Positions 26,453 through 62,999 of a stretch of 64,000 nt of DNA are shown here, in pieces. The translations under genes were made by a program, and so were the position numbers. This stretch comes from Guillardia theta CCMP2712 (taxonomy: Eukaryota > Protista > Cryptophyta). The stretch spans positions 411,319 to 475,318 of the forward strand of contig NW_005434657.1 in NCBI RefSeq assembly GCF_000315625.1, in the 5' to 3' direction. How positions within the stretch are numbered: the stretch's first letter is position 1; every line of letters begins with the position of its first letter. The notes under the pieces were generated by a model, which was not told the origin of the DNA, did not search any database, and saw nothing but the letters and a program-made list of their open reading frames with translations.

Positions 26453-27139
26453 TCAAATCTCAACATCAATTTCATCCGATTCGTCGGCAGTCAGAAACCA
26501 CTCGATCCACTTCTGGTCCACGATCTGCTCAGAGATGTCCTCAGCATTTGCGTCTCCACCATCACTTTCCACTTGCACGCAATCGGACGAAATGTCGGAT
26601 TCAGACATGGCATCGTCTTGGTTGTCCGCAACGGGAGCAGGTTCTGATGGTTTTGTCGAAGATGATCCGGAGGTCTTAATGTTGCTCAACAGACATTCTT
26701 CCGCCGTTCTGAACTTGGTGCGAGGTTTGGGCTGTGGTGCCGCTTCCGATTCTTCTTTGGCTTTTGATCTGGTGTATGGCCAACGATTTAAGCCCAGCCG
26801 ACGGCAGGCTGTCTTGAGGCTTGTCAGTGAGATGCCCTAAGAAGGAGAGTGTAAGCTTTAACAGTAAGTGAGGATTCAAAGAGATCCAACTCACCAGTTC
26901 TTTGCAGCGTCTTCTTGACGGAGGTGATAGAGTCGCCCCAGCATGATCAAGTTGAGATCAACCTTGCCATTGCTTGGTTCTTTCCGGCCTTGGCCCTGGC
27001 CCTCACGACCACGTTTGATTGCATGTCTAGTTGAACGTTTACTGATTCGTGGCGTCAAAGTCGTTGCAGAAGTCTCCGAATCAAGCTTCGTCCTTAGGAT
27101 TTCCTTGTGCTTGGGGCCGATGGCACAATGATGTCGCAA
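26453..27139 (-). pseudogene. Divergent RWP-RK transcription factor with an apparent 1-nt frameshift at the end of exon 1
   Basis: Exon 1 ends LYHLRQEDAAK. Exon 2 reads GISLTSLKTACRRLGLNRWPYTR...WIEWFL. The donor falls in phase 2 but the acceptor needs phase 0. Confidence 0.65.
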
Positions 27140-51768: not shown

Positions 51769-52402
51769 TCACTCTCCTATAGCCCAAACATCCTGTTCCC
51801 CGTCCGAGTCTGGCCTCGTCATGTACCATGCTATCCAGCTCCCCTCAAGAGGCTCCCATCCCTCTCCGAGCCCCTCCTCCTCACTTTCATCTCCTTTCAA
51901 CGGCCTCGGCATGCCGATTTCTTTTGGCAGCTCCTCGTCAACGTCCTCGTCCTCTCCATCGTAGCTCGCTGCCTCAGACAACTGCCCCCCACTCCGACCT
52001 CTGGACCCCGACTGCCTCAGTCCCTCCTCCTCTCCTGACGCCTCGGCATTTGGCTCGCAAGATGCTGCTTGCCTGTCCGTCCCTTGCGAGCCCTCTCCCT
52101 CCTCCACCGTCGCTGGTGGAGTCACAAGATCTGTGTACCCTCGTGCATACGGCCAGCGAGCAAGGCCCAGCTTCCGGCAGCACGTCTTCAAGCTCGTCAG
52201 CGACATCCCCTGCCATCGTAGTCACCGCATCCATCGCCCCCAGCAGACAGAACAAGGAGGGGCTTACCAGGGAGTAGGCGGCGTCTTCCTGCCTCATGTG
52301 GAAGTAGGGGCTCAGGGAGTCGAGGGTGAGCTGGACGGTGACGGGGGGGCGATGGTGGATTCTGGCTCGGACGGAGCAGGAGGGAGCGGCCCGAGTGTCC
52401 AT
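51769..52402 (-). CDS. Small RWP-RK transcription factor (paralogue B), intron 52210-52267
   Basis: LTLDSLSPYFHMRQEDAAYSL|GMSLTSLKTCCRKLGLARWPYAR, with C-terminal GWEPLEGSWIAWYM. Confidence 0.9.
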
Positions 52403-53069
52403 GCCGCTTGGGTACTGGTGGCTGGAACGCCTGATCGAGCTTATGCGTACAAGGATACAGGAGGTACCAGACTGCTAGAAACAAATGCTCGCTTTGTCTT
52501 CCCGTCTCTGTCTCTGTCACTGTCTCTGTCTCTGTCTCTGTCTCTGTCTCTGTCTCTGTCTCTGTCTCTGTCTCTGTCTGCCTCACTCACTCACTCACTC
52601 ACTCACTCTCCCTCCCTCCCTCCCTGCCTCCCTCCCTCCCTGCCTGCCTCCCTCCCCTCACCCTGAATACCCTACTCACACTGCCATGTTGGAAACATTC
52701 CTGTCCCTCTCTCCTGCTCCAGCACAGTCCTCGCCACGCGGCACCCTCTCGTCCTCTGCCTGCCGGAATATTTTTTTACCCCCTTCCTTCACGTTCCGAC
52801 TGTCGGCGACGTACCGACCGTCTTATTAACACCTGGAGATTTCCGTAAGTATCCGACGCCTTGAGATCGCCCGCCCGGACCTCCTGCCGCAGTGCTGTCC
52901 CGAACACGTCACGGTCCTTCCGCCCACCTTGCCACGCAAACCGCTGACACTGCTGCTGACATGCTACTAGGCTAGCTACTACCGTACTACTGGCTCGGAG
53001 CCTCCGGCAGGCAGATGTCACGAGACCGTCCTGGCTCAGATACACCCCGACGATGCCCAGGCGTAGTGG

Positions 53070-53725
53070 GGACCGTACCGGTACCGTACGGTTCTTGCGC
53101 TGTTGCGCGTTAACGGTGCACTGTAAAGCCGGAAGCCCTCCGGGAATAATAACTTAACTGTAGTAGTACGGAATTAGTATAGGTCACGGTGACCGTGATA
53201 GTTTTATTACACTCCTACTATTACTCCACGGATGATCCCGACGGTGACGGTGACGGTGCATTGAACGGTCACGGTGACCCGGTCACCCCGCCGACGGTCG
53301 GAAGCTGTCCGGAAGCCGCGCAGTGCGGCGGGAGCGCCGAGCGGAGTGAATGGGACTTCACGGTGCCGGGCAGGTCCGAGCCCCCGCGGCCGGACGCCCG
53401 GACTCCGGACTCCCGGAGACGGTCGGCGTGCGGTACGGTGAGTATCACTGGCCCGGAGTCTCCGCCCCCGGCTACTAGGTGCCCGGCGGGCAGACGGCGT
53501 TCGGGGGCCGCCAGTGCCCGGCCCGGCTGAGTGGCAGGCCTCGGCGTGAGCCCGGCGCCGCGCCCGGCGCCCGGCCGCCCGGCCCGGCCACACCGGACTC
53601 GGAGTCACCCGGCGTACTACTGTGACTCGTGTGACAGGGTCCCGGTCCACTGCCCAGGCACGGTCACCGGGGCCCGGGCGCCGGGCCGGGCGGCCGGTGG
53701 CCGGGCCCGAGTCCACCGGGGCTCC
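53070..53725. promoter_or_regulatory. Largest palindrome module, upstream of PCIF1
   Basis: accgtaccggtaccgtacggt, gtcacggtgac repeated, ggactccggactcccgg, ccggccgcccggcccggcc. Confidence 0.45.
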
Positions 53726-53849
53726 TCTCCCTTCCTCCTCCCTTCCTCCCTTCCTCCCTTCCTCCCTCCTACCCTCCTGCTGTGATCTCTGAGCAAGCCC
53801 CAACAGCTGCTCCTCCCCTCCCCTCCCCCCTCCCGTCGCCGCAAGCAAC

Positions 53850-56800
53850 ATGAGCAGCCCTATGAGCATGGACGAAGAACTGCCTGAAGGCTGGACGAAA
53901 CATTTCTCGAACAGTTGGAAGGTGAGAGGTGGTTGATTACGAGGATGGAGAGGAAACGAGCAGAGGATGGTGGCGGAGACGGAGATGAAGGAGAAGATGA
54001 TGATTCAGATGAATTTTGAGATGATCATGTGGACAGCTCCTGATAAGGAGCATTCACAGAGGCATTACTACTTCAATTCAAAGACGGGAAAGCAAAGCTG
54101 GGAACACCCGAACAAGATGGGTGAGCAGGAACACGATGTCTCCCTTGCGCTCTGTGACATCCTGAAGGAGTGGGATCGGACTCTGAGACGACTCCGAAAT
54201 TCGATACGTCCGAGGGTGAGGAGTTGGAGGTGAAGACGCGAAGTTGAGGCGGGGGTTGTTAGGGGACCATAAGAGGAAGGGCGCCCCGTCCATGGACATG
54301 ATAGGTGACATGCTGAATCAGTGCCGTCAAGGGCCATTGCTGATCTTAACTGCAGTGAAGCACCCGCGTCAAAGCATCGGGTAGTTTCGACGGACAGTCC
54401 TCCTCGTCCTTGTCCTCCTGCCCCTGCTCCTCGTCCTGTTCTTTCAAGCCATCTTGTGCTCTTGTGCGAATCTACAGTTAAGTTTCTCCCTGTTGTCTAC
54501 AGGAATCAGCAGATGTTAGCTCCGGGAGAGATGAGCCAAGAAGACACGCCCGAGATCGCTGTCCTAAGAGACAAGCAAGTCAAGAGCCTGCTGTCAACTG
54601 TCCGGCAGGTGAGCGTCGGGGAAGGGATGCAGAAGTTTTGTGAGCGAGTGTGAGAGCAGCTATGTTCAAGGAGCAACTCGATCTCCAAAGAACCTGGGAA
54701 TGCTCTGACTCGGTCTCCCGCCCCATGAGATCTCAATGCGATCTCTCACTTGAACACTTCAGCTTCTTCTTTCTCAGCAATCTCGTCCCCAAACACGGAG
54801 AGAAGGCAATCTTCATGGAGACAACCTGGGCACGACCCTTGACTTCTGATCTGTGCAGGAGGACCCGCTGATTCCCTCCAATGCCGGAGTGGATAGCTGC
54901 CTACACAGGTGCTTCGATCCTCAGCGTCTGCTGCGTCCCCCTTACCTTGTGCGCCAGAGAACTTCTCAAAGCCGGCATGGACCCCTCTGAATCCGAATCA
55001 ACCTGCAAGCAGGTGGCTGCATGTGACGTGCCTCTTGTCGCTGTCCTCACCGTCTCCCGTAGCTGTCGGAAGCAGCGACTGAAGCGGCCAAGGTGACCCG
55101 GCACATTTGCGGCCTGAGTTGACCCCGAGGCCCTCCAGACCATATGGGAGGCTCGCACGCAGAACAGGAGGAGGGTGGAGAGTTACATACCAGAAGGTAG
55201 GACGAGGTTGACACCCAAGTCAAGTTGATTCGGTCGGCAGTTACCGAGAAGGAGTTGCAGAATCGTCAGATCCAGGTGTGTGCCCTTCCTCCTCCTCCTC
55301 GCTCCTCCCTCCTTCTCCCTCTTCCGCCCTCCTCCCTCCTCCCTCCGCTCTACCGGTGACGTCTCTGCGCAGATCATGTGGAGAGACACCATGCTGGTCA
55401 TCAACCGCGATCACTACCTCAAGGTGAGATGGTGATGTGGGCCGATCGCTCCTTCTCTCACCATCTTTGAACGGCAGGTCAAGAGGATGTATGACGAGCA
55501 GGGAAACGATCCACAGTTGTTCCTCGTCCGCCTTTTCTGCCTCCTTCAGAGGTCAGTCGAGGACCCCAGCAAGTCATCCTGCTGACCCTCTGCAGATACG
55601 AATCGATCGGAGGAGCAGGATATCAGGTGAGAGGAGGGGAGCTCCATGGCGTGCTATCCTAACAGGACGGGTGGAGGCGGCAATTCCGAGCTCTGCCTTC
55701 AAGACGCTGCAGGAGGTTGTGAACTTTCCTTTCTGCAGGACTCTCTGACATGGTTCAGAATTTCGGGGTAGCTCATGAGTGTTTTGCCTCACCCTTGAAC
55801 TCGACCCTGCCGTCGTTCGGATCTGGTGAAGCCTGGTAGTATCTTCCATCGCTGAAGTCTCGGCAGCTTTCTTCGACACAGACATGTTCTTTGGAAGCAG
55901 GGGGAGTTTCTTCGACATAAATGTGAGCTGTACATCCTGTAGCGCGTTGATGTAGCAGGGCTCATAGCGAAAACATGTCTTGAGGAGCATCAAACAACAA
56001 TAGCTGTGAAGCCGTGAAGTCTGATCAAGCTTTCAACAGCGTTGGACTGATCGGGGTAGGCTGGACTTCTTCAAGGGCGGATCGTTCGAGGCCAACCCTC
56101 CCTTCGTGAGAGCCTTCAGGTCCCTCTGAGGGTGGTGAGTGCGTCCTTAGGTCGAAGAGTCGATGCAGCTCATGTCGGAAACGATCGAAGTAGTCCTGCA
56201 GAAGACGGAGGTGAATCTGGATACGGTGTTTAACTTGACTTGACCGGCTTCTTGGTACCACCAGGAGCACAGTCTGCCCGCCTCCTTCATTGTGATCGTT
56301 CCGGGTAAGATACTGAGACTGCAGCTCTCGTTGCTCACTCCATGCAGCGTGGACGGATGAGAGGGCCCATGAGATCATGAGGGAGAGCAGGTGAGATGAA
56401 GTGTTGCGTTACAAGGCCTCCGTTCCGGCCTCTCCTTATTCTCTGTGCCCTCTGTCTGTTCGCTGACCATCATCAAGATTTTGCCAGAAATTGATTGTGC
56501 TCGAGAAGAGCCAGCACTCATATCGCTCCGGCACTCAGCACAACAGCATCCAACAGTACCATGACGCGGGCTTCAGGTGAGTTCGACCCAGGGAGCGAGA
56601 GCGAGCTGAGATCATGCTGGGCAGAACCTCAATATTCTTTCTTCAAAACACGCAAGGCGCGCAGAAGTGGCCGGTAGGGAGCAGGACGAGCTCGCCCCTG
56701 ATGATGCACGAGACCTGTCTTCCTTGACTTGTGCTGCTCCTGCCTTGTTGACCTTGTTTTTGCGTGTGTGAACGGACCAGCAGGGCGAGGAGGTGGAAGT

Positions 56801-56850
56801 ATAGGCGGATGCTGCTGCTGCTGCTAATGCCTCTGCTTTTGATGCTGCTT

Positions 56851-56908
<58 letters not shown>

Positions 56909-57022
56909 CGATGCTGATGCCAATGAGAAAGGGGAAGAGGAGGCCGTGCTTTACGTGGATTGCGGCAGGTCACCTCAAGAGCCATCGAGAGCTTGCAAGA
57001 AGCTTTCAAGAAATGGCAGTGA
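53850..57022 (+). CDS. PCIF1: PCIF1/CAPAM-like cap-specific adenosine N6-methyltransferase with an N-terminal WW domain
   Basis: WW: LPEGWTKHFSNSWK-RHYYFNSKTGKQSWEHP. MTase: ECFASPLN, GGSFEANPPF, SFIVIVP, HSYRSGTQH, FFLQN...KWP. Confidence 0.88.
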
Positions 57023-57402
57023 TCTCTCCTCCCTCCCACAGTAAATTTCCTCCCCCGCCCCTGACACTTGTCGCCTGCCCGCCGTTGGCGCGTCCATCGG
57101 AGATGATCCACTTCAGACGTCTTTGAGATCAGAGAGCCTCTCTTCCTCACACGAATCCTTGAGCTCCTCCAACGGCTCTCCTAACCTCCCCCCCACTGCC
57201 CATGGCCCTCTACCAACACACCCCACATCTGTTCCGATGCCTCTGCCTCTATCTAGATGCGCGCAGGAGCCTTCCTCTTCTCTTGCAGCCTCTTGTTCCC
57301 CTCCTCAGGGAGTGCGTCGGAGGGAACGATCCTTTTCCCAAGTACACTTGACAATAACCCCCAGCAAAAGTATTTCGGGCGTTTTTCTCATATGAAAAAA
57401 TG

Positions 57403-57525
57403 ATCGCAAGTATACTTGTGATCTCTATTTCAGAATCGCAAGTATACTTGTGATCTCTATTTCAGAATCACAAGTTGAAATAGATAACAGAGATCACAAG
57501 TTCACTGAAATAGAGATCACAAGTT
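57403..57525. repeat. 32-bp tandem duplicate plus a 20-bp inverted copy (foldback)
   Basis: atcgcaagtatacttgtgatctctatttcaga occurs twice. ctgaaatagagatcacaagt (57505-57524) is the reverse complement of its core. Confidence 0.8.
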
Positions 57526-57869
57526 CAACAGGTCAGAGTCTTAGCCAGGTTTTGGATGAATGTCTCCGCTATCCACCGGCTCATTTAGAGACATGTTTAA
57601 TTCTTCAGCATCCTAAAGTTTCAGAAAGGGCACTTAGTGGCCACAAAGGCCATCCTCCTATCTACCCGCAAACACCCCGATAATGCGAACATTGATCAGA
57701 TTCCTTGACCTCCCCTTGCTCCTCCTCCTCCTCCTCCTCCACCACATCAACAAGAGCGGGGTGTGCGGGGGGAGTAGTAAAACACACCACTCCTCTCCTC
57801 CTACTGCTGAAAGATGATGACAGCGGCGGTTGTGTTGTTCCTCCGGCGCGTGTAGAATGAGACACAGAG

Positions 57870-58051
57870 NNNNNNNNNNNNNNNNNNNNNNNNNNNNNNN
57901 NNNNNNNNNNNNNNNNNNNNNNNNNNNNNNNNNNNNNNNNNNNNNNNNNNNNNNNNNNNNNNNNNNNNNNNNNNNNNNNNNNNNNNNNNNNNNNNNNNNN
58001 NNNNNNNNNNNNNNNNNNNNNNNNNNNNNNNNNNNNNNNNNNNNNNNNNNN
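57870..58051. other. Assembly gap
   Basis: Run of N. Confidence 1.
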
Positions 58052-58581
58052 ACCTCCCCTTCGTCTCCTCCTCCTCCTCCTCCTCCTCCTCCTCCTCCTC
58101 CTCCTCCTCCTCCTCCTCCTCCTCCTCCTCCTCCTCCTCCTGCATGTACCATGCTATCCAGCTCCTCTCAAGAGGCTCCCATCCCTCTCCCTTGTCTCCC
58201 CATGCCCCACTTCTAACCATGTGCCCCGACACCCTCCAACCCCACCCCTGCCCCCTGCCCCCGTCTCCTCCTGATGCTAACCCCATCGCTGGTGCAGCTG
58301 TAAGGTCCGAAAAGCCTCGCGTGTACGGCCAGCGAGCAAGGCCCAGCTTCCGGCAGCACGTCTTCAAGCTCGTCAGCGACATCCCCTGCCATCGTCGTCA
58401 CCGCGTCCTCCATCGCCCCCAGCAGACAGGACAAGGAGGAGCTTACCAGGGAGCAGGCGGCGTCTTCCTGCCTCATGTGGAAGTAGGGGCTCAGGGAGTC
58501 GAGGGTGAGCTGGACGGTGACGGGAGCGTGGTTAAGAGATCTGGCTCTGACGGAGCAGGAGGGGAGGGGAGGAGAGGTCAT
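58052..58581 (-). CDS. Small RWP-RK transcription factor (paralogue C) with a poly-Glu tail running into the gap; intron 58386-58446
   Basis: YFHMRQEDAACSL|GMSLTSLKTCCRKLGLARWPYTR...EGWEPLERSWIAWYMQEEEE. Confidence 0.85.
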
Positions 58582-59531
58582 GGAGGCAGTGTGCTGGTAT
58601 GCGAGGAAGGTGCGAGGTCAGTGCGGTGAAGCAAACGGCGTCAAAACGGAACAGCATGGACTACTTCAGGCTGCGGGTAAAGCTTCTTACTACGTGACAC
58701 TTACTTAGGATCGCTGACTGGATGCCTTACAACCCGTGTATTCCCCATGTTCTCGTTGGCTGTGAGGGGGTGGGGGTGTGTGACTAAGCGAACACGTCAC
58801 TGCCGTAACGACGCAAGTGAGGGTCGGGGTGGATGGATGTATTATCGGACCTACCCTGTTCCCCAGTGATGAGAGGTCAAAGGAGGGGGTGGGTGTACAG
58901 GTTTGCCTCCATTGCTGCAACGTTTCGCTCAGCCCATGGACGTGTGGGGGGTGGGGTACTGAGAGCCGATGTGTGGGTTACTACAGTACCAAACTGTACC
59001 CGTCAGACGATCTCGCTTGAATCTCGCGGCCGCCGCCGGGCTCGGTGAACCGTCACGGCCGCGAGACATGAGGGGAGACCCGATAGGCTCCGATGGGTAG
59101 GTGCCGCGATGTGATGATCGGAAGTCACAAGCTCCGAGCCAGACTCGACGCTGCAAGTCTTTTACTCAAAGTTAAGTTAAAGATCGGTACGAGGTAGAGC
59201 GTGTTGCCTGGACTTCGTTGTTTCAACAATCGATCACCGGGAGGACGTGCCTGAGTGGCGAACCCCGATCTACGAGGCATTACTGCTGGCCCCTGGACTC
59301 ACGGACCCTCACTGAGAATGGAACTGATGGTCCGTCAGATCTCAGGCGAGTTTTGATGATCTCACTTTAACCGGTTTGTTGTGTTCATAACGTTGCCAAA
59401 GCAACTGTTCTTGCAGAGAAACAACACAAACATCACTTCCATTGTTTTTTCTTCTTCTTTCAACTCTACAGAGAATCATGCTTGTAGAGAGTGTGTTGCT
59501 AAAACTTTTCATCTTGTGTTGCCAGCACGTT

Positions 59532-60084
59532 TCATTTGTACGCCCAATTCTCAGATTCCTCGTCTCTGTCCTCCTCGTTCTCCTGGTCCTCCTGCACGTA
59601 CCATGCTATCCAGCTCCTCTCAAGAGGCTCCCATCCCTCTCCCTCCCATCCCTCTCCCTCTCCCTCCTCTCCCTCTCGCCCTCGCTCTCGCTCACCCTCC
59701 TCTCCCTCTCCCTCCTCTCCCTTATTCAAGTCTGAAAGACTCGGCAGGACCGAAGCCGATCCCTCCTCCCCTCCTGACACATCCGACTCGCTTGATGCTG
59801 CCTGCCTGTCTGTTCCGCCTCGCATGTACGGCCAGCGAGCAAGGCCCAGCTTCCGGCAGCACGTCTTCAAGCTCGTCAGCGACATCCCCTGCCATCGTCG
59901 TCACCGCGTCCTCCATCGCCCCCAGCAGACAGGACAAGGAGGGGCTTACCAGGGAGCAGGCGGCGTCTTCCTGCCTCATGTGGAAGTAGGGGCTCAGGGA
60001 GTCGAGGGTGAGCTGGACGGTGACGGGGGGGCGATGGTGGATTCTGGCTCGGACGGAGCAGGAGGGGAGGGGAGGAGAGGTCAT
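59532..60084 (-). CDS. Small RWP-RK transcription factor (paralogue D)
   Basis: Same exon 1 and intron. RWPYMR...EGWEPLERSWIAWYV. Confidence 0.9.
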
Positions 60085-60652
60085 GGAGGCAGTGTGCTGG
60101 TATGCGAGGAAGGTGCGAGGTCAGTGCGGTGAAGCAAACGGCGTCAAACTGAGTTGCGTGCAATCGCTAACTCAAATTCTCCCGAATAAAACTTCTTAAA
60201 AAGGTCGAACAAGTCACGGGGCAACGCTATCTCGACTGAATCTCGCGGCCTCCGTCAGCACCTGGTGGCTCATGGCGCACTCTCAGTCGCAAGAATCAGT
60301 TATGGCTGGCAGTTACATCACCCGAGGGGCCGCAGTCTTGGGGCCTTTGGAGTTCAGCAATTCCGATGATCCGGTGGCCCGGTCGGACTTTGCCGAGAAC
60401 ATCAGAAATTGAAAGGCGGCAGACAGTCACCCGCGCTGCTCAGCGAAACTCCCTAAGACCTTCGGTAGAAGTACTTCACTGCTCAAAGGCCAGTCAAGTT
60501 TCTGACCTCATCATCAGCCGTTCAACTTTTGCATTGGGAGGTTAGACTAGTTCTGACACCCATGGCGGCTGGACAGACATCAAGCAAGGACGACTGTCAT
60601 ATCGTGTGCAATCTCGAGTTGGTCGAGTTTACTAGCGATTCTAGATCAGCGT

Positions 60653-62026
60653 ACATCTAGCCGTTACATGCTTACAGTCCTTTGAGAGTCCTTCGCATGA
60701 CTTTGTTAACGATCAAGGCTAAGCCTAGCCTTGTCTGTCCCTTACCTTGGGTAGGTCCAATCTGAGTTGAGCTCGCTGTGCTAGGGCTCTGATACGCTCC
60801 AGCTGCTGCCTTCTTGGAGATTACTCTCTCAGAAGACTTGGCTTTCAACTTACTGACGATGCTTGTCATCTGACTCTTGCTCACGAGTCTTTTCAGACTC
60901 TGCTCTCTGCTTCTGCTAGTCTGCAACCTTAGGACATCGCAAGCACGACTCCCAGAACGACGAATTCGCTTGAATGAAGTCCCCCATGACTTCCATATCA
61001 TGACGTTCCACAGCAGCGCCTCGCAAGGCACGCTGCGACAAATGGTTACACACAGAGTCAGTGCCAGTGGCCTCTGCCGTGTCTTGAGAACTTCAAGTAG
61101 CAACTGAAACACGGTTGCCACATGGTCATGACATCCTTGTTATGTCCAATATCGAGGATTCTGTCAAAGAATCCCTCGAGTCAATGCTCTTTGCTGACCT
61201 GGGAGAGCTCCAGGGTGCACGTAAACATGCTTGTCATGAGATCGCATCACATGTGGCGACTGTCCTGCGATCTCCATGCGCCGGAGAACGCGATCTCGTT
61301 GGACAGCTGTGAATCGAAGTCTCTTTGACCTCCGCTTCAATCTTGGCGGCGGTATCGTCGCGGCCAAATGTTCATGTGAGGCCCTGCTTCAGCATGTCTT
61401 TCACAACTCCTGGGACCACGTTGAACGTAGCCATCCTATGGCACGGCGTGTGTAAGGGATCGAACCTTGATCCCAGCGCTCAGAAGTTGGAGGTTTCTGT
61501 TTCGACATTCCATCAGGGCTCCCAGCCGCCGCTTGGAGGCCACCTGCTAGGGGAATGCCGCGTCATATGCTATGTCATGCACGTCCTACAAGACTTCCTT
61601 CCATGATTTCCTCGTTGTGTCTTGAACGACTGCCTCCAGGCAGCCATGTCAGTGTTGTCGTTGTCCCGCAAGGCTCATCCAGAACAGTGGAGAGGGGGGA
61701 AGACAACACACATCACAAGACTCACTACAACACCAACACTGTCGCTACCGAAGCGTGTCACACTCCGAAGCTTTACGGGTTGCAGACGTCCAGAGCGAAA
61801 GCTCAAGGCACCTCTGCTGGATCACACATAGAGGTGTAGTGTAGTGATGTCGAGTCTCGGCCAGCAGGGATCATCCTCTAGAGCACATCTAGCCGTTACA
61901 TGCTTACAGTCCTTTGAGAGTCCTTCCCCTGACTTTGTTAACGATCAAGGCTAAGCCTAGCCTTGTCTGTCCCTTACCTTGTGTAGGTCCAATCTGAGTT
62001 GAGCTCGCTTTGCTAGGGCTCTGATA
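60653..62026. repeat. 142-bp direct repeats (60653-60794 and 61885-62026) bracketing about 1.1 kb of decayed coding-like DNA
   Basis: acatctagccgttacatgcttacagtcc...ctagggctctgata occurs twice with a few mismatches. Confidence 0.8.
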
Positions 62027-62452
62027 GAGACGGGATAGCATTAACTTTGTTTTTAAGGATTGAAACATGCGTATTCATTGCCGACTAAGAATACAGAAAC
62101 CGGTATGATTGATAAAATACTCTTTACCATTTCGCACAGATTCTCTTTCTTTCTGGGCAACTCTGAGCAGGACTGGGTCTTCAGACCCCGTCTAGTTGTT
62201 GCAACATGCGAGCATCAAGTGGCTGTTTGTATGACACTGAGTCAGACAATCTGCTCAGCCTGCAGTCATACAATAAGTGAATGGTGCAAAGGAGCAGTAC
62301 AGGGCAAGTTTAAACCCCATGAGTTCAAGTGACTTCTGTGAGACATCATCGGTGAGAAGCTGAAGAATTTAAGAAGGTGATGGGTGCAATTTTCAATCCC
62401 ATGGGTTTAATCGTATCTGAGCATGCAGCAGCAACAGGCTTTGGTTTCTACA

Positions 62453-62999
62453 CTAGTGAGCACCCTCGAGGTCAGAGAGATTCTCCTCGTCTCTCGTCAT
62501 GTACCATGCTATCCAGCTCCTCTCAAGAGGCTCCCATCCCTCTCCCTCCTCCCAACTGCCTTCCAACCGCTGCCCTGTCTCTACCTCTGTCTCGACATGT
62601 TCTGCGAATATTCTCTTCTCTCTGCTGATCCTCGTGTCTCCTTCCTCATGGCTCCCTGCTGCAGTCAAGACTGCAGCCGATTCCCGCCCTCCGCCCTCCC
62701 CTCCTTTGAGAGGTTCTGAAACAACAAGCTGCTCTTGTGCAGTAGGCCAGCGAGCAAGGCCCAGCTTCCGGCAGCACGTCTTCAAGCTCGTCAGCGACAT
62801 CCCCTGCCATCGTCGTCACCGCATCCACCATCGCCCCCAGCAGGCAGGACAAGGAGTGGCTTACCAGGGAGTAGGCGGCGTCTTCCTGCCTCATGTGGAA
62901 GTAGGGGCTCAGGGAGTCGAGGGTGAGCTGGACGGTGACGGGGGGGCGATGGTGGACTCTGGCTCGGACGGAGCAGGAGGGAACAGGGTTTGTGGTCAT
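62453..62999 (-). CDS. Small RWP-RK transcription factor (paralogue E) with a degenerate RWPTAQ motif
   Basis: YFHMRQEDAAYSL|GMSLTSLKTCCRKLGLARWPTAQ...EGWEPLERSWIAWYM. Confidence 0.85.

What the first reader, a model, noticed from the sequence alone, without database searches (positions are those of the whole stretch)
51769..62999. RWP-RK family with constant-variable-constant architecture: the intron is better conserved than the coding linker
Seen: paralogues B-E share near-identical DNA over exon 1, the ~60-nt intron and the RWP core. Identity ends abruptly just after RWP, where each copy has an unalignable in-frame linker of different length (about 40-90 aa). Near-identity then returns for a ~45-bp block encoding EGWEPLERSWIAWY. 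Established: RWP-RK is the DNA-binding domain of NIN/RKD/MID regulators of nitrogen response and gametogenesis. Inference: either gene conversion homogenises two cassettes around a variable segment, or the linker is exchanged or expands rapidly. Either would give a diversified TF repertoire.
Basis: partly seen in the sequence, partly recalled or inferred. Interest (0 to 1): 0.75.

Follow-up and report, generated by a model that had tools for sequence, protein, structure and literature searches.

The report
Gene-converted RWP-RK gene cluster
Four neighbouring small transcription-factor genes of the alga Guillardia theta keep their DNA-binding part (intron included) almost identical because the copies overwrite each other by gene conversion, while the floppy middle of each protein drifts freely: a clean example of a known process, not a new mechanism.

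Summary
Four minus-strand genes (B, C, D, E) share a 235-238-nt 5' block (most of exon 1, a 58/61-nt intron, the first 60 nt of exon 2 up to RWP; 92-100% identity). They also share a 43-nt 3' block (EGWEPLERSWIAWY; 98-100%). The in-frame linkers of 46-95 codons between the blocks do not align better than shuffled sequence, except one B-D patch.

The best explanation is old paralogues whose 5' block is homogenised by gene conversion between paralogues. Two environmental contigs carry D-type and E-type linkers (87-88% identical to D and E). In the exon-2 block, however, they share four states, three of them synonymous, that differ from all four window copies. So the linker tree and the block tree disagree.

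The linker is a real coding, disordered spacer under weak constraint (dN/dS 0.5). It has no donor loci, and D shows microsatellite length change. The 3' block is a C-terminal motif (P-L-E-x-x-W-I-x-W-Y plus an acidic tail) found in many Guillardia and Hanusia RWP-RK proteins. Conversion there is plausible but untestable.

The assembly gap touches only copy C's tail. This scan already found the same process in another RWP-RK cluster of this genome (s1-448816). Interest is moderate to low.

The parts
51769..52402 (-). Copy B gene (191 codons from the first ATG): exon 1 52268-52402, intron 52210-52267 (58 nt), exon 2 51769-52209
   Evidence: Database model GUITHDRAFT_104604 (P0002) uses the same splice (AAYSL|GMSL) and reads the linker as coding. 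PF02042 scores 40.8 bits.
52150..52384 (-). B 5' constant block (exon 1 nt 19 to the Pro codon of RWP, intron included)
51866..52149 (-). B linker: 95 codons, acidic, Gly/Glu/Ser-rich
   Evidence: No donor elsewhere in the genome.
51823..51865 (-). B 3' constant block (EGWEPLEGSWIAWY; one A-to-G difference, Arg to Gly)
58052..58581 (-). Copy C gene, 5' part: exon 1 58447-58581, intron 58386-58446, exon 2 58052-58385. It runs through 26 Glu codons and is still open at the gap edge.
   Evidence: Exon 2 alone scores 29.7 bits on PF02042.
58326..58563 (-). C 5' constant block. It contains a patch found only in C at 58525-58548 (11 differences in 24 nt).
58189..58325 (-). C linker (46 codons)
58146..58188 (-). 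C 3' constant block
57870..58051 (.). Assembly gap inside or next to copy C's acidic tail
   Evidence: The 10-mer AAGGGGAGGT lies at 58052-58061 and again at 57708-57717.
57662..57869 (-). Probable 3' end of copy C: one frame is open from the gap edge to TAG at 57662-57664 and ends ...EEEEEEEQGEVKESDQCSHYRGVCG
   Evidence: From about 57598 to 57735 it is 92% identical to the 3' end of environmental contig L076. Continuity across the gap is not shown.
59532..60084 (-). Copy D gene (163 codons): exon 1 59950-60084, intron 59889-59949, exon 2 59532-59888
59829..60066 (-). D 5' constant block
59641..59828 (-). D linker (63 codons). Its second half is a GA-rich simple repeat.
   Evidence: more than 70 genome-wide matches at about 80% to query nt 107-201. 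87% identical to L076, with a 60-nt length difference.
59598..59640 (-). D 3' constant block
62453..62999 (-). Copy E gene (161 codons): exon 1 62865-62999, intron 62804-62864, exon 2 62453-62803. After RWP it reads TAQEQ, so the Arg/Lys of the RK motif is absent.
62744..62981 (-). E 5' constant block. Its last base (CCT, not CCG) is shared with the E-like environmental contig.
62544..62743 (-). E linker (67 codons)
   Evidence: 177/200 identical to L077 with no indel. dN/dS 0.5.
62501..62543 (-). E 3' constant block
26453..27024 (-). Paralogue A: a distant member of the same subfamily. It has an intron at or near the same domain position and ends KWIEWFLTADESDE...

Best explanation
B-E are four old paralogues of a very large family of small RWP-RK transcription-factor-like proteins specific to Guillardia and Hanusia. 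Each protein has three parts:
- an N-terminal three-helix RWP-RK DNA-binding domain, split by an old phase-0 intron;
- a disordered acidic/Gly-rich linker under weak constraint;
- a short C-terminal amphipathic aromatic helix (P-L-E-x-x-W-I-x-W-Y) followed by an acidic tail. I infer this to be an activation or partner-binding motif.

The DNA pattern arises in two steps. Purifying selection keeps the two functional modules similar. Non-reciprocal recombination between the neighbouring copies (interlocus gene conversion, perhaps with unequal crossing-over) then repeatedly overwrites the 5' module, carrying its intron and synonymous sites along. Tracts stop where homology stops, right after RWP. 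The linkers are too diverged to pair, so each is inherited vertically and drifts by substitutions, in-frame indels and GA-microsatellite slippage.

Shown: concerted evolution of the 5' block, vertical inheritance of the linkers, coding status of the linkers, and the family-wide C-terminal motif. Inferred: conversion of the 43-nt 3' block, the role of the C-terminal motif, and DNA binding.
For: 1. Incongruent trees. In the first 60 nt of exon 2, sites 1, 34, 42 and 45 read G/C/G/C in B, C, D and E, but A/A/C/T in both environmental relatives D' (L076) and E' (L077); three of the four are synonymous. Linkers pair D-D' (111/128) and E-E' (177/200) and are otherwise unalignable. Site 60 pairs E with E', which places the tract end at the RWP codons.
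2. E/E' dS is 0.25 in the block and 0.20 in the linker, yet the four window copies show no synonymous difference inside the exon-2 block.
3. The intron is 92-98% identical among B-E. Six other paralogues on six contigs have an intron at the same domain position with unrelated sequence, 47-119 nt long. So the intron position is old and its sequence is young.
4. Flanks are unalignable, and the copies are 1.5-6.2 kb apart with another gene between B and C.
5. D' and E' share 159/159 nt of E-type upstream sequence and the same loss of exon 1 plus intron, but carry different linkers. D' also carries a C-type 3' end. The junctions of this mosaic fall at the two constant blocks.
6. The linker is coding. 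It is open only in the joining frame (about 4e-7 by chance), all length differences from the relatives are multiples of 3, and the database model of B reads it as coding.
7. The C-terminal motif is present in 22 of 38 distinct RWP ORFs fetched from this genome. It is also in 46 of the 136 RWP-containing proteins among the best 150 hits of a profile search. Twenty of these were looked up and come from Guillardia theta, Hanusia phi, MMETSP transcripts and two environmental contigs.
8. An AlphaFold model of an intronless family member (L043 ORF) gives the domain pLDDT 86-94, the linker 50-58, and a C-terminal helix at 132-147 with pLDDT about 72.
Against: - The concerted-evolution signal rests on four sites and two short environmental contigs of unknown organism (project PRJEB17505, found in no paper).
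- Both contigs lack exon 1 and the intron, so the intron itself could not be compared across genomes. These copies may be decaying: E' has Trp to Cys in RWP.
- The 43-nt 3' block has no informative variation. Selection alone could explain its protein conservation, and 43-76 nt is short for a conversion tract.
- No orthologue of B or C was found.
- Expression and splicing of C, D and E are not shown. Only B's model turned up in the protein collection searched.
- Copy E lacks the Arg/Lys after RWP, so it may not bind DNA.
- GC bias of conversion is not established: 2 of the 3 synonymous sites favour GC in the window copies.
Confidence: 0.75

Rival explanations
1. Recent duplication of the whole gene, followed by hypermutation or cassette-like exchange of the linker from donor loci. 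This is a programmed diversification of the middle segment.
For: There is an abrupt fall from 98-100% identity to chance-level identity right after RWP. D's linker carries an expandable GA-rich repeat. The D-like environmental gene is a mosaic.
Against: No donor exists for the B, C or E linkers anywhere in the genome. Linkers are stably inherited: E-E' are 88.5% identical without indels, and linker dS (0.20) is no higher than block dS (0.25). Flanks outside the genes are also unalignable, which argues against recent whole-gene duplication.
Confidence: 0.06
2. No conversion. The two blocks are identical only because of very strong purifying selection, including selection on synonymous sites and on the intron (for example codon bias, splicing signals or an RNA element).
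For: dN/dS is 0.09 in the block and 0.1 in the C block plus tail. The exon parts of the block are more conserved than the intron. The C-terminal motif is conserved across the family.
Against: Three synonymous changes did accumulate between the window copies and the environmental relatives, and they are shared by both relatives. Introns at the same position in six other paralogues are unrelated in sequence and length. C and D also share about 85 nt of upstream sequence that B and E lack, so tract ends vary.
Confidence: 0.1
3. The 'linker' is not coding. It is, or contains, a second intron, which would make its variability trivial.
For: In B, C and D a GT follows the RWP codons (CC|GTA), and AG dinucleotides precede the C block.
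Against: E has no GT at that place. All four linkers are open only in the joining frame. Length differences from the relatives are multiples of 3. dN/dS is 0.5, not 1. The database model of B reads the linker as coding. At least 15 intronless paralogues have the domain, linker and motif in one ORF.
Confidence: 0.03
4. Assembly artefact: collapsed or chimeric copies make the blocks look identical.
For: There is a gap in copy C's tail, and a 10-mer repeats on both sides of it.
Against: The four copies have different flanks, N-termini, linkers and tails. Two independent environmental assemblies reproduce the D-type and E-type linkers joined to the same blocks.
Confidence: 0.02

Closest known systems
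Concerted evolution of tandem gene families by interlocus gene conversion limited to part of the gene. Textbook cases recalled from memory: globin, opsin and RH genes. In this scan: the RWP-RK cluster of finding s1-448816 in the same genome.
   Same: Paralogues within a genome are more alike than orthologues across genomes in a bounded tract that includes neutral sites. Sequence outside the tract shows old divergence. Tract ends vary between pairs.
   Different: Here there are two islands, of about 238 nt and about 43-76 nt, around a non-homologous coding spacer. The second island is unproven as a conversion tract. The 5' tract carries an intron. One environmental relative looks like a three-part mosaic with its joints at the islands.
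Small RWP-RK regulators of the RKD/MID type (Chlamydomonas MID, plant RKD; Chardin et al. 2014, as cited in the papers read)
   Same: Short proteins whose only Pfam domain is RWP-RK (PF02042). They have no GAF or PB1 domain.
   Different: The domain is N-terminal and ends at RWP-Y-x-R; the K of RK is Gly, and E lacks both residues. The usual helix after RK is not matched (model positions 44/46-49). A C-terminal W-I-x-W-Y acidic motif is present. The family runs to hundreds of genes in one genome.
Acidic activation domains of transcription factors: aromatic or bulky hydrophobic residues embedded in acidic, disordered sequence (general knowledge)
   Same: A Trp/Tyr/Ile/Leu cluster next to an acidic tail, sitting after a disordered acidic linker. 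It is predicted to be helical.
   Different: No functional test exists. The motif is far more strictly conserved (an invariant Trp and a near-invariant second Trp) than typical activation domains, which suggests a specific partner.

Membership tests
RWP-RK domain family (Pfam PF02042) | Domain HMM score above the gathering cut-off (29.3 bits) | tested here: met
   Copy B's spliced database model P0002 scores 40.8 bits on model positions 14-43. Copy C's exon 2 alone scores 29.7 bits. For D and E the exons were searched apart: exon 1 of D gives 17.9 bits (model 1-22), and the exon 2 of D and E give 28.5 and 27.5 bits (model 23-43). Joined models of C, D and E were not searched.
RWP-RK domain family (Pfam PF02042) | Signature R-W-P-x-R-K | tested here: inconclusive
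   B, C and D read RWPY[A/T/M]RG: the Arg is kept and the Lys is replaced by Gly. E reads RWPTAQE, with both lost. Most Guillardia paralogues read RWPYxR/K.
NIN-like proteins (NLP subfamily) | GAF-like N-terminal region and C-terminal PB1 domain | tested here: not met
   No Pfam domain other than RWP-RK is found in any exon or in P0002. The proteins are only 161-191 residues long.
Concerted evolution by interlocus gene conversion | Within the tract, paralogues of one genome group together against their orthologues. Outside the tract, orthologues group together. | tested here: met
   Four fixed differences (3 synonymous) separate B=C=D=E from D'=E' in the exon-2 block. Linkers pair D-D' at 87% and E-E' at 88.5%.
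Concerted evolution by interlocus gene conversion | Neutral sites (intron, synonymous) are homogenised while flanks are saturated | tested here: met
   The intron is 92-98% identical, and there are no synonymous differences inside the exon-2 block. Flanks and linkers sit at chance level. Introns of other paralogues are unrelated.
Concerted evolution by interlocus gene conversion | GC-biased outcome | tested here: inconclusive
   The block is 64-67% GC against 49-53% in the flanks. Only 2 of the 3 synonymous differences favour GC in the window copies.
Concerted evolution by interlocus gene conversion | The same holds for the 3' block | tested here: inconclusive
   About 38 nt of the block are invariant in all six sequences apart from one change private to B, so there are no informative sites.

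The most novel reading that the evidence does not exclude
The two conserved modules act as recombination anchors. Conversion and unequal exchange at the RWP-RK block and at the C-terminal motif block re-assort promoters, linkers and tails among neighbouring paralogues. The environmental gene with E-type upstream, D-type linker and C-type 3' end would be one such product. This would give a modular shuffling route that helps diversify a family of hundreds of genes limited to Guillardia and Hanusia. The invariant W-I-x-W-Y acidic helix of that family would be a so far undescribed effector or partner-binding motif.
Probability: 0.2. Interest if true: 0.55.

Novelty: new member of a known kind. Interest (0 to 1): 0.35.

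Why it matters
The case shows at base-pair resolution how domain-limited gene conversion can make an intron look 'conserved' and a coding spacer look 'hypervariable'. That is a caution for anyone reading such patterns as programmed diversification.

It also defines the architecture of a very large cryptophyte RWP-RK subfamily that I found discussed in none of the papers retrieved: DNA-binding domain, disordered linker, W-I-x-W-Y acidic C-terminal motif. At least 150 loci in this genome score above the Pfam cut-off. The short C-terminal motif is a concrete target for functional tests. RWP-RK proteins control nitrogen responses and gametogenesis in plants and green algae, and sex in cryptophytes is still only suspected. 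A family of this size is therefore worth knowing about, but this locus alone tells nothing about function.

Tried and rejected
- Linker donors. Each linker plus tail was searched as DNA against the whole genome. Only the shared C block came back, plus a GA-rich simple repeat for D. The cassette-donor idea is rejected.
- Linker homology. Local alignments tested against dinucleotide shuffles and ungapped block counts gave one significant result, the B-D patch. Other patches seen by eye (B/C start, D/E GGEEGSASVL-like) are not significant on their own.
- Intron retention. The unspliced ORF ends after 117-143 codons in another frame and loses both the RWP half and the C block. Not pursued.
- More orthologues. 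Two scans of JGI metagenome contigs, one with a degenerate C-block pattern and one with the invariant exon-2 30-mer, found nothing. A second large protein search with B's exon 2 found no B orthologue.
- Source of the environmental contigs. Project PRJEB17505 appears in no paper of the library, so the source organism is unknown.
- Literature. I found no paper on a Guillardia RWP-RK expansion or on RWP-RK gene conversion. The one relevant item is a note of 56 RWP-RK genes in Rhodomonas salina.
- Paralogue A. A canonical GT-AG model at the shared intron position does not keep the frame. Left unresolved.
- Joined models. Joined (spliced) models of C, D and E were not sent to any search or fold tool. 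The exons were searched apart by reference, and the spliced reading was computed only locally to check the frame. B's spliced protein came from the database (P0002).
- Fold. I folded an intronless family member as a proxy. pTM is only 0.36, so nothing can be said about contacts between the C-terminal helix and the domain.


Full report
**What is there**

The window is G000:C17:411319-475318 of an 87.1-Mb, 669-contig genome. The database protein that matches copy B is GUITHDRAFT_104604 of Guillardia theta CCMP2712.

Four minus-strand genes carry the repeat: B 51769-52402, C 58052-58581 (open at the gap), D 59532-60084 and E 62453-62999. The 201-nt 5' probe and the 40-nt C-block pattern (up to 3 mismatches) each hit these four places and nothing else in the genome.

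Each gene has a 135-nt exon 1, a GTAAGC...GGCAG intron of 61 nt (58 in B) and one long exon 2.

**RWP-RK membership**

- Exon 1 matches Pfam RWP-RK model positions 1-22, and exon 2 matches positions 23-43/45. The intron therefore splits the domain cleanly.
- The database's spliced model of B uses exactly this junction and scores 40.8 bits against a cut-off of 29.3.
- I did not send joined models of C, D or E to any tool. Their exons were searched apart by reference, and the spliced reading was computed only locally to check the frame.

**The gap**

The N run 57870-58051 lies 94 nt 3' of copy C's C block. It touches neither a constant block nor a linker.

- C's ORF runs through 26 Glu codons and is still open at 58052.
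- Left of the gap, one frame is open from 57869 to a TAG at 57662-57664.
- Window 57598-57735 is about 92% identical to the 3' end of an environmental contig (L076) in which the C block, an acidic tail and this end are contiguous.
- The two sides therefore probably belong to one gene. Frame and length across the gap are unknown.
- A 10-mer repeated at 58052-58061 and 57708-57717 hints at trouble in a (GAG)n tract.
- Only the end of copy C depends on the gap.

**Checking the observation**

Pairwise identities among B-E:

| Segment | Identity |
|---|---|
| Exon 1 | 84-93% |
| Intron | 92-98% |
| First 60 nt of exon 2 | 98-100% |
| 43-nt C block | 98-100% |
| Upstream and downstream flanks | unalignable, except about 85 nt upstream shared by C and D |

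- Exon 1 variation sits in codons 2-6 and in a 24-nt patch found only in C. Nucleotides 58-135 have a single variable site.
- Linkers are 46-95 codons long. Gapped local alignments beat dinucleotide shuffles only for B-D (z 5.4).
- Ungapped identity falls to 3-9 matches per 15 nt within 15-45 nt of RWP. The abrupt boundary is therefore real.

- The intron is the least conserved part of the block. It has 7 variable sites and a 3-nt indel in 61 nt, against 2 variable sites in 138 nt of domain-coding exon. It is passively carried, not specially conserved.
- The linkers are not wholly unrelated. Short collinear patches exist, for example GTDRQAAS in B and D.

**The linker is coding**

- Each linker is open only in the frame that joins RWP to the C block, and the other two frames have stops. 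The joint chance is about 4e-7.
- The database model of B reads the linker as coding.
- Length differences from the relatives described below are 0, 3 and 60 nt.
- At least 15 intronless paralogues have the domain, linker and motif in one ORF.
- This rejects the rival that the linker is an intron.

**No donors**

The linker DNA of B, C and E matches nothing else in the genome. The second half of D's linker matches more than 70 GA-rich simple-repeat loci at about 80%. There is no cassette store.

**Relatives from elsewhere**

A word-based protein search with D's exon 2 returned two short ENA metagenome contigs.

- L076 carries a D-type linker: 111/128 identical, with 60 nt fewer of the GA repeat.
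- L077 carries an E-type linker: 177/200 identical, with no indel.
- For E against E', dS is 0.25 in the exon-2 block and 0.20 in the linker. dN/dS is 0.09 in the block, 0.5 in the linker and 0.1 in the C block plus tail.

So linkers are inherited vertically at about the neutral rate under weak constraint. The two modules are under strong constraint.

**The decisive pattern**

In the 60-nt exon-2 block, sites 1, 34, 42 and 45 have one state in B, C, D and E and another in both D' and E'; three of the four are synonymous. Site 60 pairs E with E'.

- The block groups by genome and the linker groups by orthology. This is the signature of concerted evolution.
- The tract ends at the RWP codons.
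- On the linker tree, each of the four sites would need a parallel identical change. By my own rough estimate from the measured divergence, about 0.2 such sites are expected in 59 nt.
- The argument holds even if the contigs came from unassembled paralogues of the same species.
- E and E' have dS 0.25, yet the four window copies show no synonymous difference inside the block. Their intron is 92-98% identical. The last homogenisation among B-E is therefore younger than the split from the environmental relative.

**Supporting observations**

- Six other paralogues on six contigs have a phase-0 intron at the identical domain position (...AAxxL | G[ILV]SL...). Their intron sequences are unrelated and 47-119 nt long. 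The position is old, and the shared sequence in B-E is young.
- D' and E' share 159/159 nt of E-type upstream sequence and the same loss of exon 1 plus intron (ATGACCA joined to GGATGTCG), yet they carry different linkers. D' ends with a C-type 3' flank.
- The joints of this mosaic fall at the two constant blocks, which fits recombination at both. With k=127 contigs and only 59 nt between the deletion joint and the linker, the joints must be present in real reads. That last step is my inference from how such assemblies work.

**The 3' block**

Apart from one change private to B, about 38 nt of this block are invariant in all six sequences. There are no informative sites, so conversion cannot be tested. 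Its protein conservation has a simple reason: it is a family motif.

- 22 of 38 distinct RWP ORFs fetched from this genome end with W[ILVM]x[WRAC][YFI] within 40 residues of the stop, usually preceded by P-[LI]-[DE]-x-x and followed by acidic residues.
- In a 20-sequence alignment the first Trp is invariant and the second nearly so.
- A profile search of 1.84 billion representatives gave 5978 hits at E up to 0.001. Of the 136 RWP-containing proteins among the best 150, 46 have the motif after linkers of 39-177 residues.
- Twenty of these were looked up. Nine are from Hanusia phi, eight from G. theta, and two are environmental contigs. One is an MMETSP transcript. Another cluster holds MMETSP transcripts next to G. 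theta gene models, one of them identical in sequence, so family members are expressed.
- An AlphaFold model of an intronless member (L043 ORF, used as a proxy) shows a confident three-helix domain (pLDDT 86-94), a low-confidence linker (50-58) and a C-terminal helix at 132-147 (about 72). pTM is 0.36, so docking cannot be judged.

**Context**

The genome holds at least 150 RWP-RK matches over the Pfam cut-off, out of 571 first-look candidates, many of them in arrays. Earlier notes of this scan report hundreds of RWP-RK genes, and gene conversion of the domain in another four-gene cluster (s1-436909, s1-448816). So the process has been seen before on other DNA of this genome.

I found no paper on the Guillardia expansion or on RWP-RK gene conversion. 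A preprint notes 56 RWP-RK genes in Rhodomonas salina.

**Mechanism**

- Shown: concerted evolution of the 5' block with a tract end at RWP; vertical, near-neutral evolution of a coding linker; microsatellite length change in D; a family-wide C-terminal motif.
- Inferred: the same recombination keeps the 3' block identical at the DNA level. The linkers block heteroduplex extension, so the two modules behave as separate islands. The C-terminal aromatic-acidic helix is an activation or partner-binding motif.
- Untested: expression of C, D and E; DNA binding, with E lacking the residues after RWP; any adaptive value of the linker diversity.

**Verdict**

The 'exchange or rapid expansion' reading is mostly wrong.

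This is a new, well-resolved instance of a known process in a known domain family. It has two modest extras: a previously unremarked C-terminal motif that defines a Guillardia/Hanusia subfamily, and a mosaic relative that hints at module re-assortment.

Noticed in passing
window 26453-27024 (-): Paralogue A is a distant member of the same subfamily. It has the domain and a C-terminal KWIEWFLTADESDE motif. With a canonical GT-AG intron at the shared position, however, exon 1 (…RQEDAAKN) and exon 2 (GISLTSLK…) are out of frame. It may be a pseudogene, a 1-nt assembly error or an unusual splice.
   Followed up: partly
L076:1-581 and L077:1-804 (ENA metagenome contigs, PRJEB17505): Both environmental relatives lack exon 1 and the intron. 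The start codon region joins directly and in frame to exon 2, reading MTRMSLTSLK. This removes the first half of the RWP-RK domain. The E-like contig also has Trp to Cys in RWP. The deletion lies between two similar short strings (ACGATGRC) at the start codon and at the intron's 3' end.
   Followed up: partly
window 58525-58548 (-), exon 1 of copy C: A 24-nt patch has 11 differences found only in copy C (RSLNHA instead of RIHHRP), inside an otherwise near-identical block. It could be a compensated frameshift or a micro-conversion from an unknown source.
   Followed up: no
window about 53850-56700 (+), between copies B and C: A multi-exon gene has a WW domain (PF00397, 27.3 bits on the ORF 53967-54233). 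It also encodes a piece reading DFFKGGSFEANPPF at about 56064-56108 that weakly matches PCIF1_WW (12.6 bits, E 0.1). It looks like a PCIF1/CAPAM-type cap methyltransferase.
   Followed up: partly
whole genome; for example G000:C2:281944-291187 and several stretches of C50: At least 150 RWP-RK domain matches score above the Pfam cut-off (571 first-look candidates). Many lie in regular tandem arrays, such as seven copies spaced about 1528 bp apart on C2. In the C50 array three genes share an identical domain head with different tails.
   Followed up: partly
window 60655-60795 and 61888-62028 (+): A direct repeat of about 140 nt, near-identical by eye, lies in the D-E intergenic region (…tctagccgttacatgcttacagtcctttgagagtcc…).
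   Followed up: no
window 57395-57530 (+): Tandem and inverted copies of a unit of about 32 nt (…atcgcaagtatacttgtgatctctatttcaga…) lie just 3' of copy C's probable end. This may be a small hairpin-forming element.
   Followed up: no
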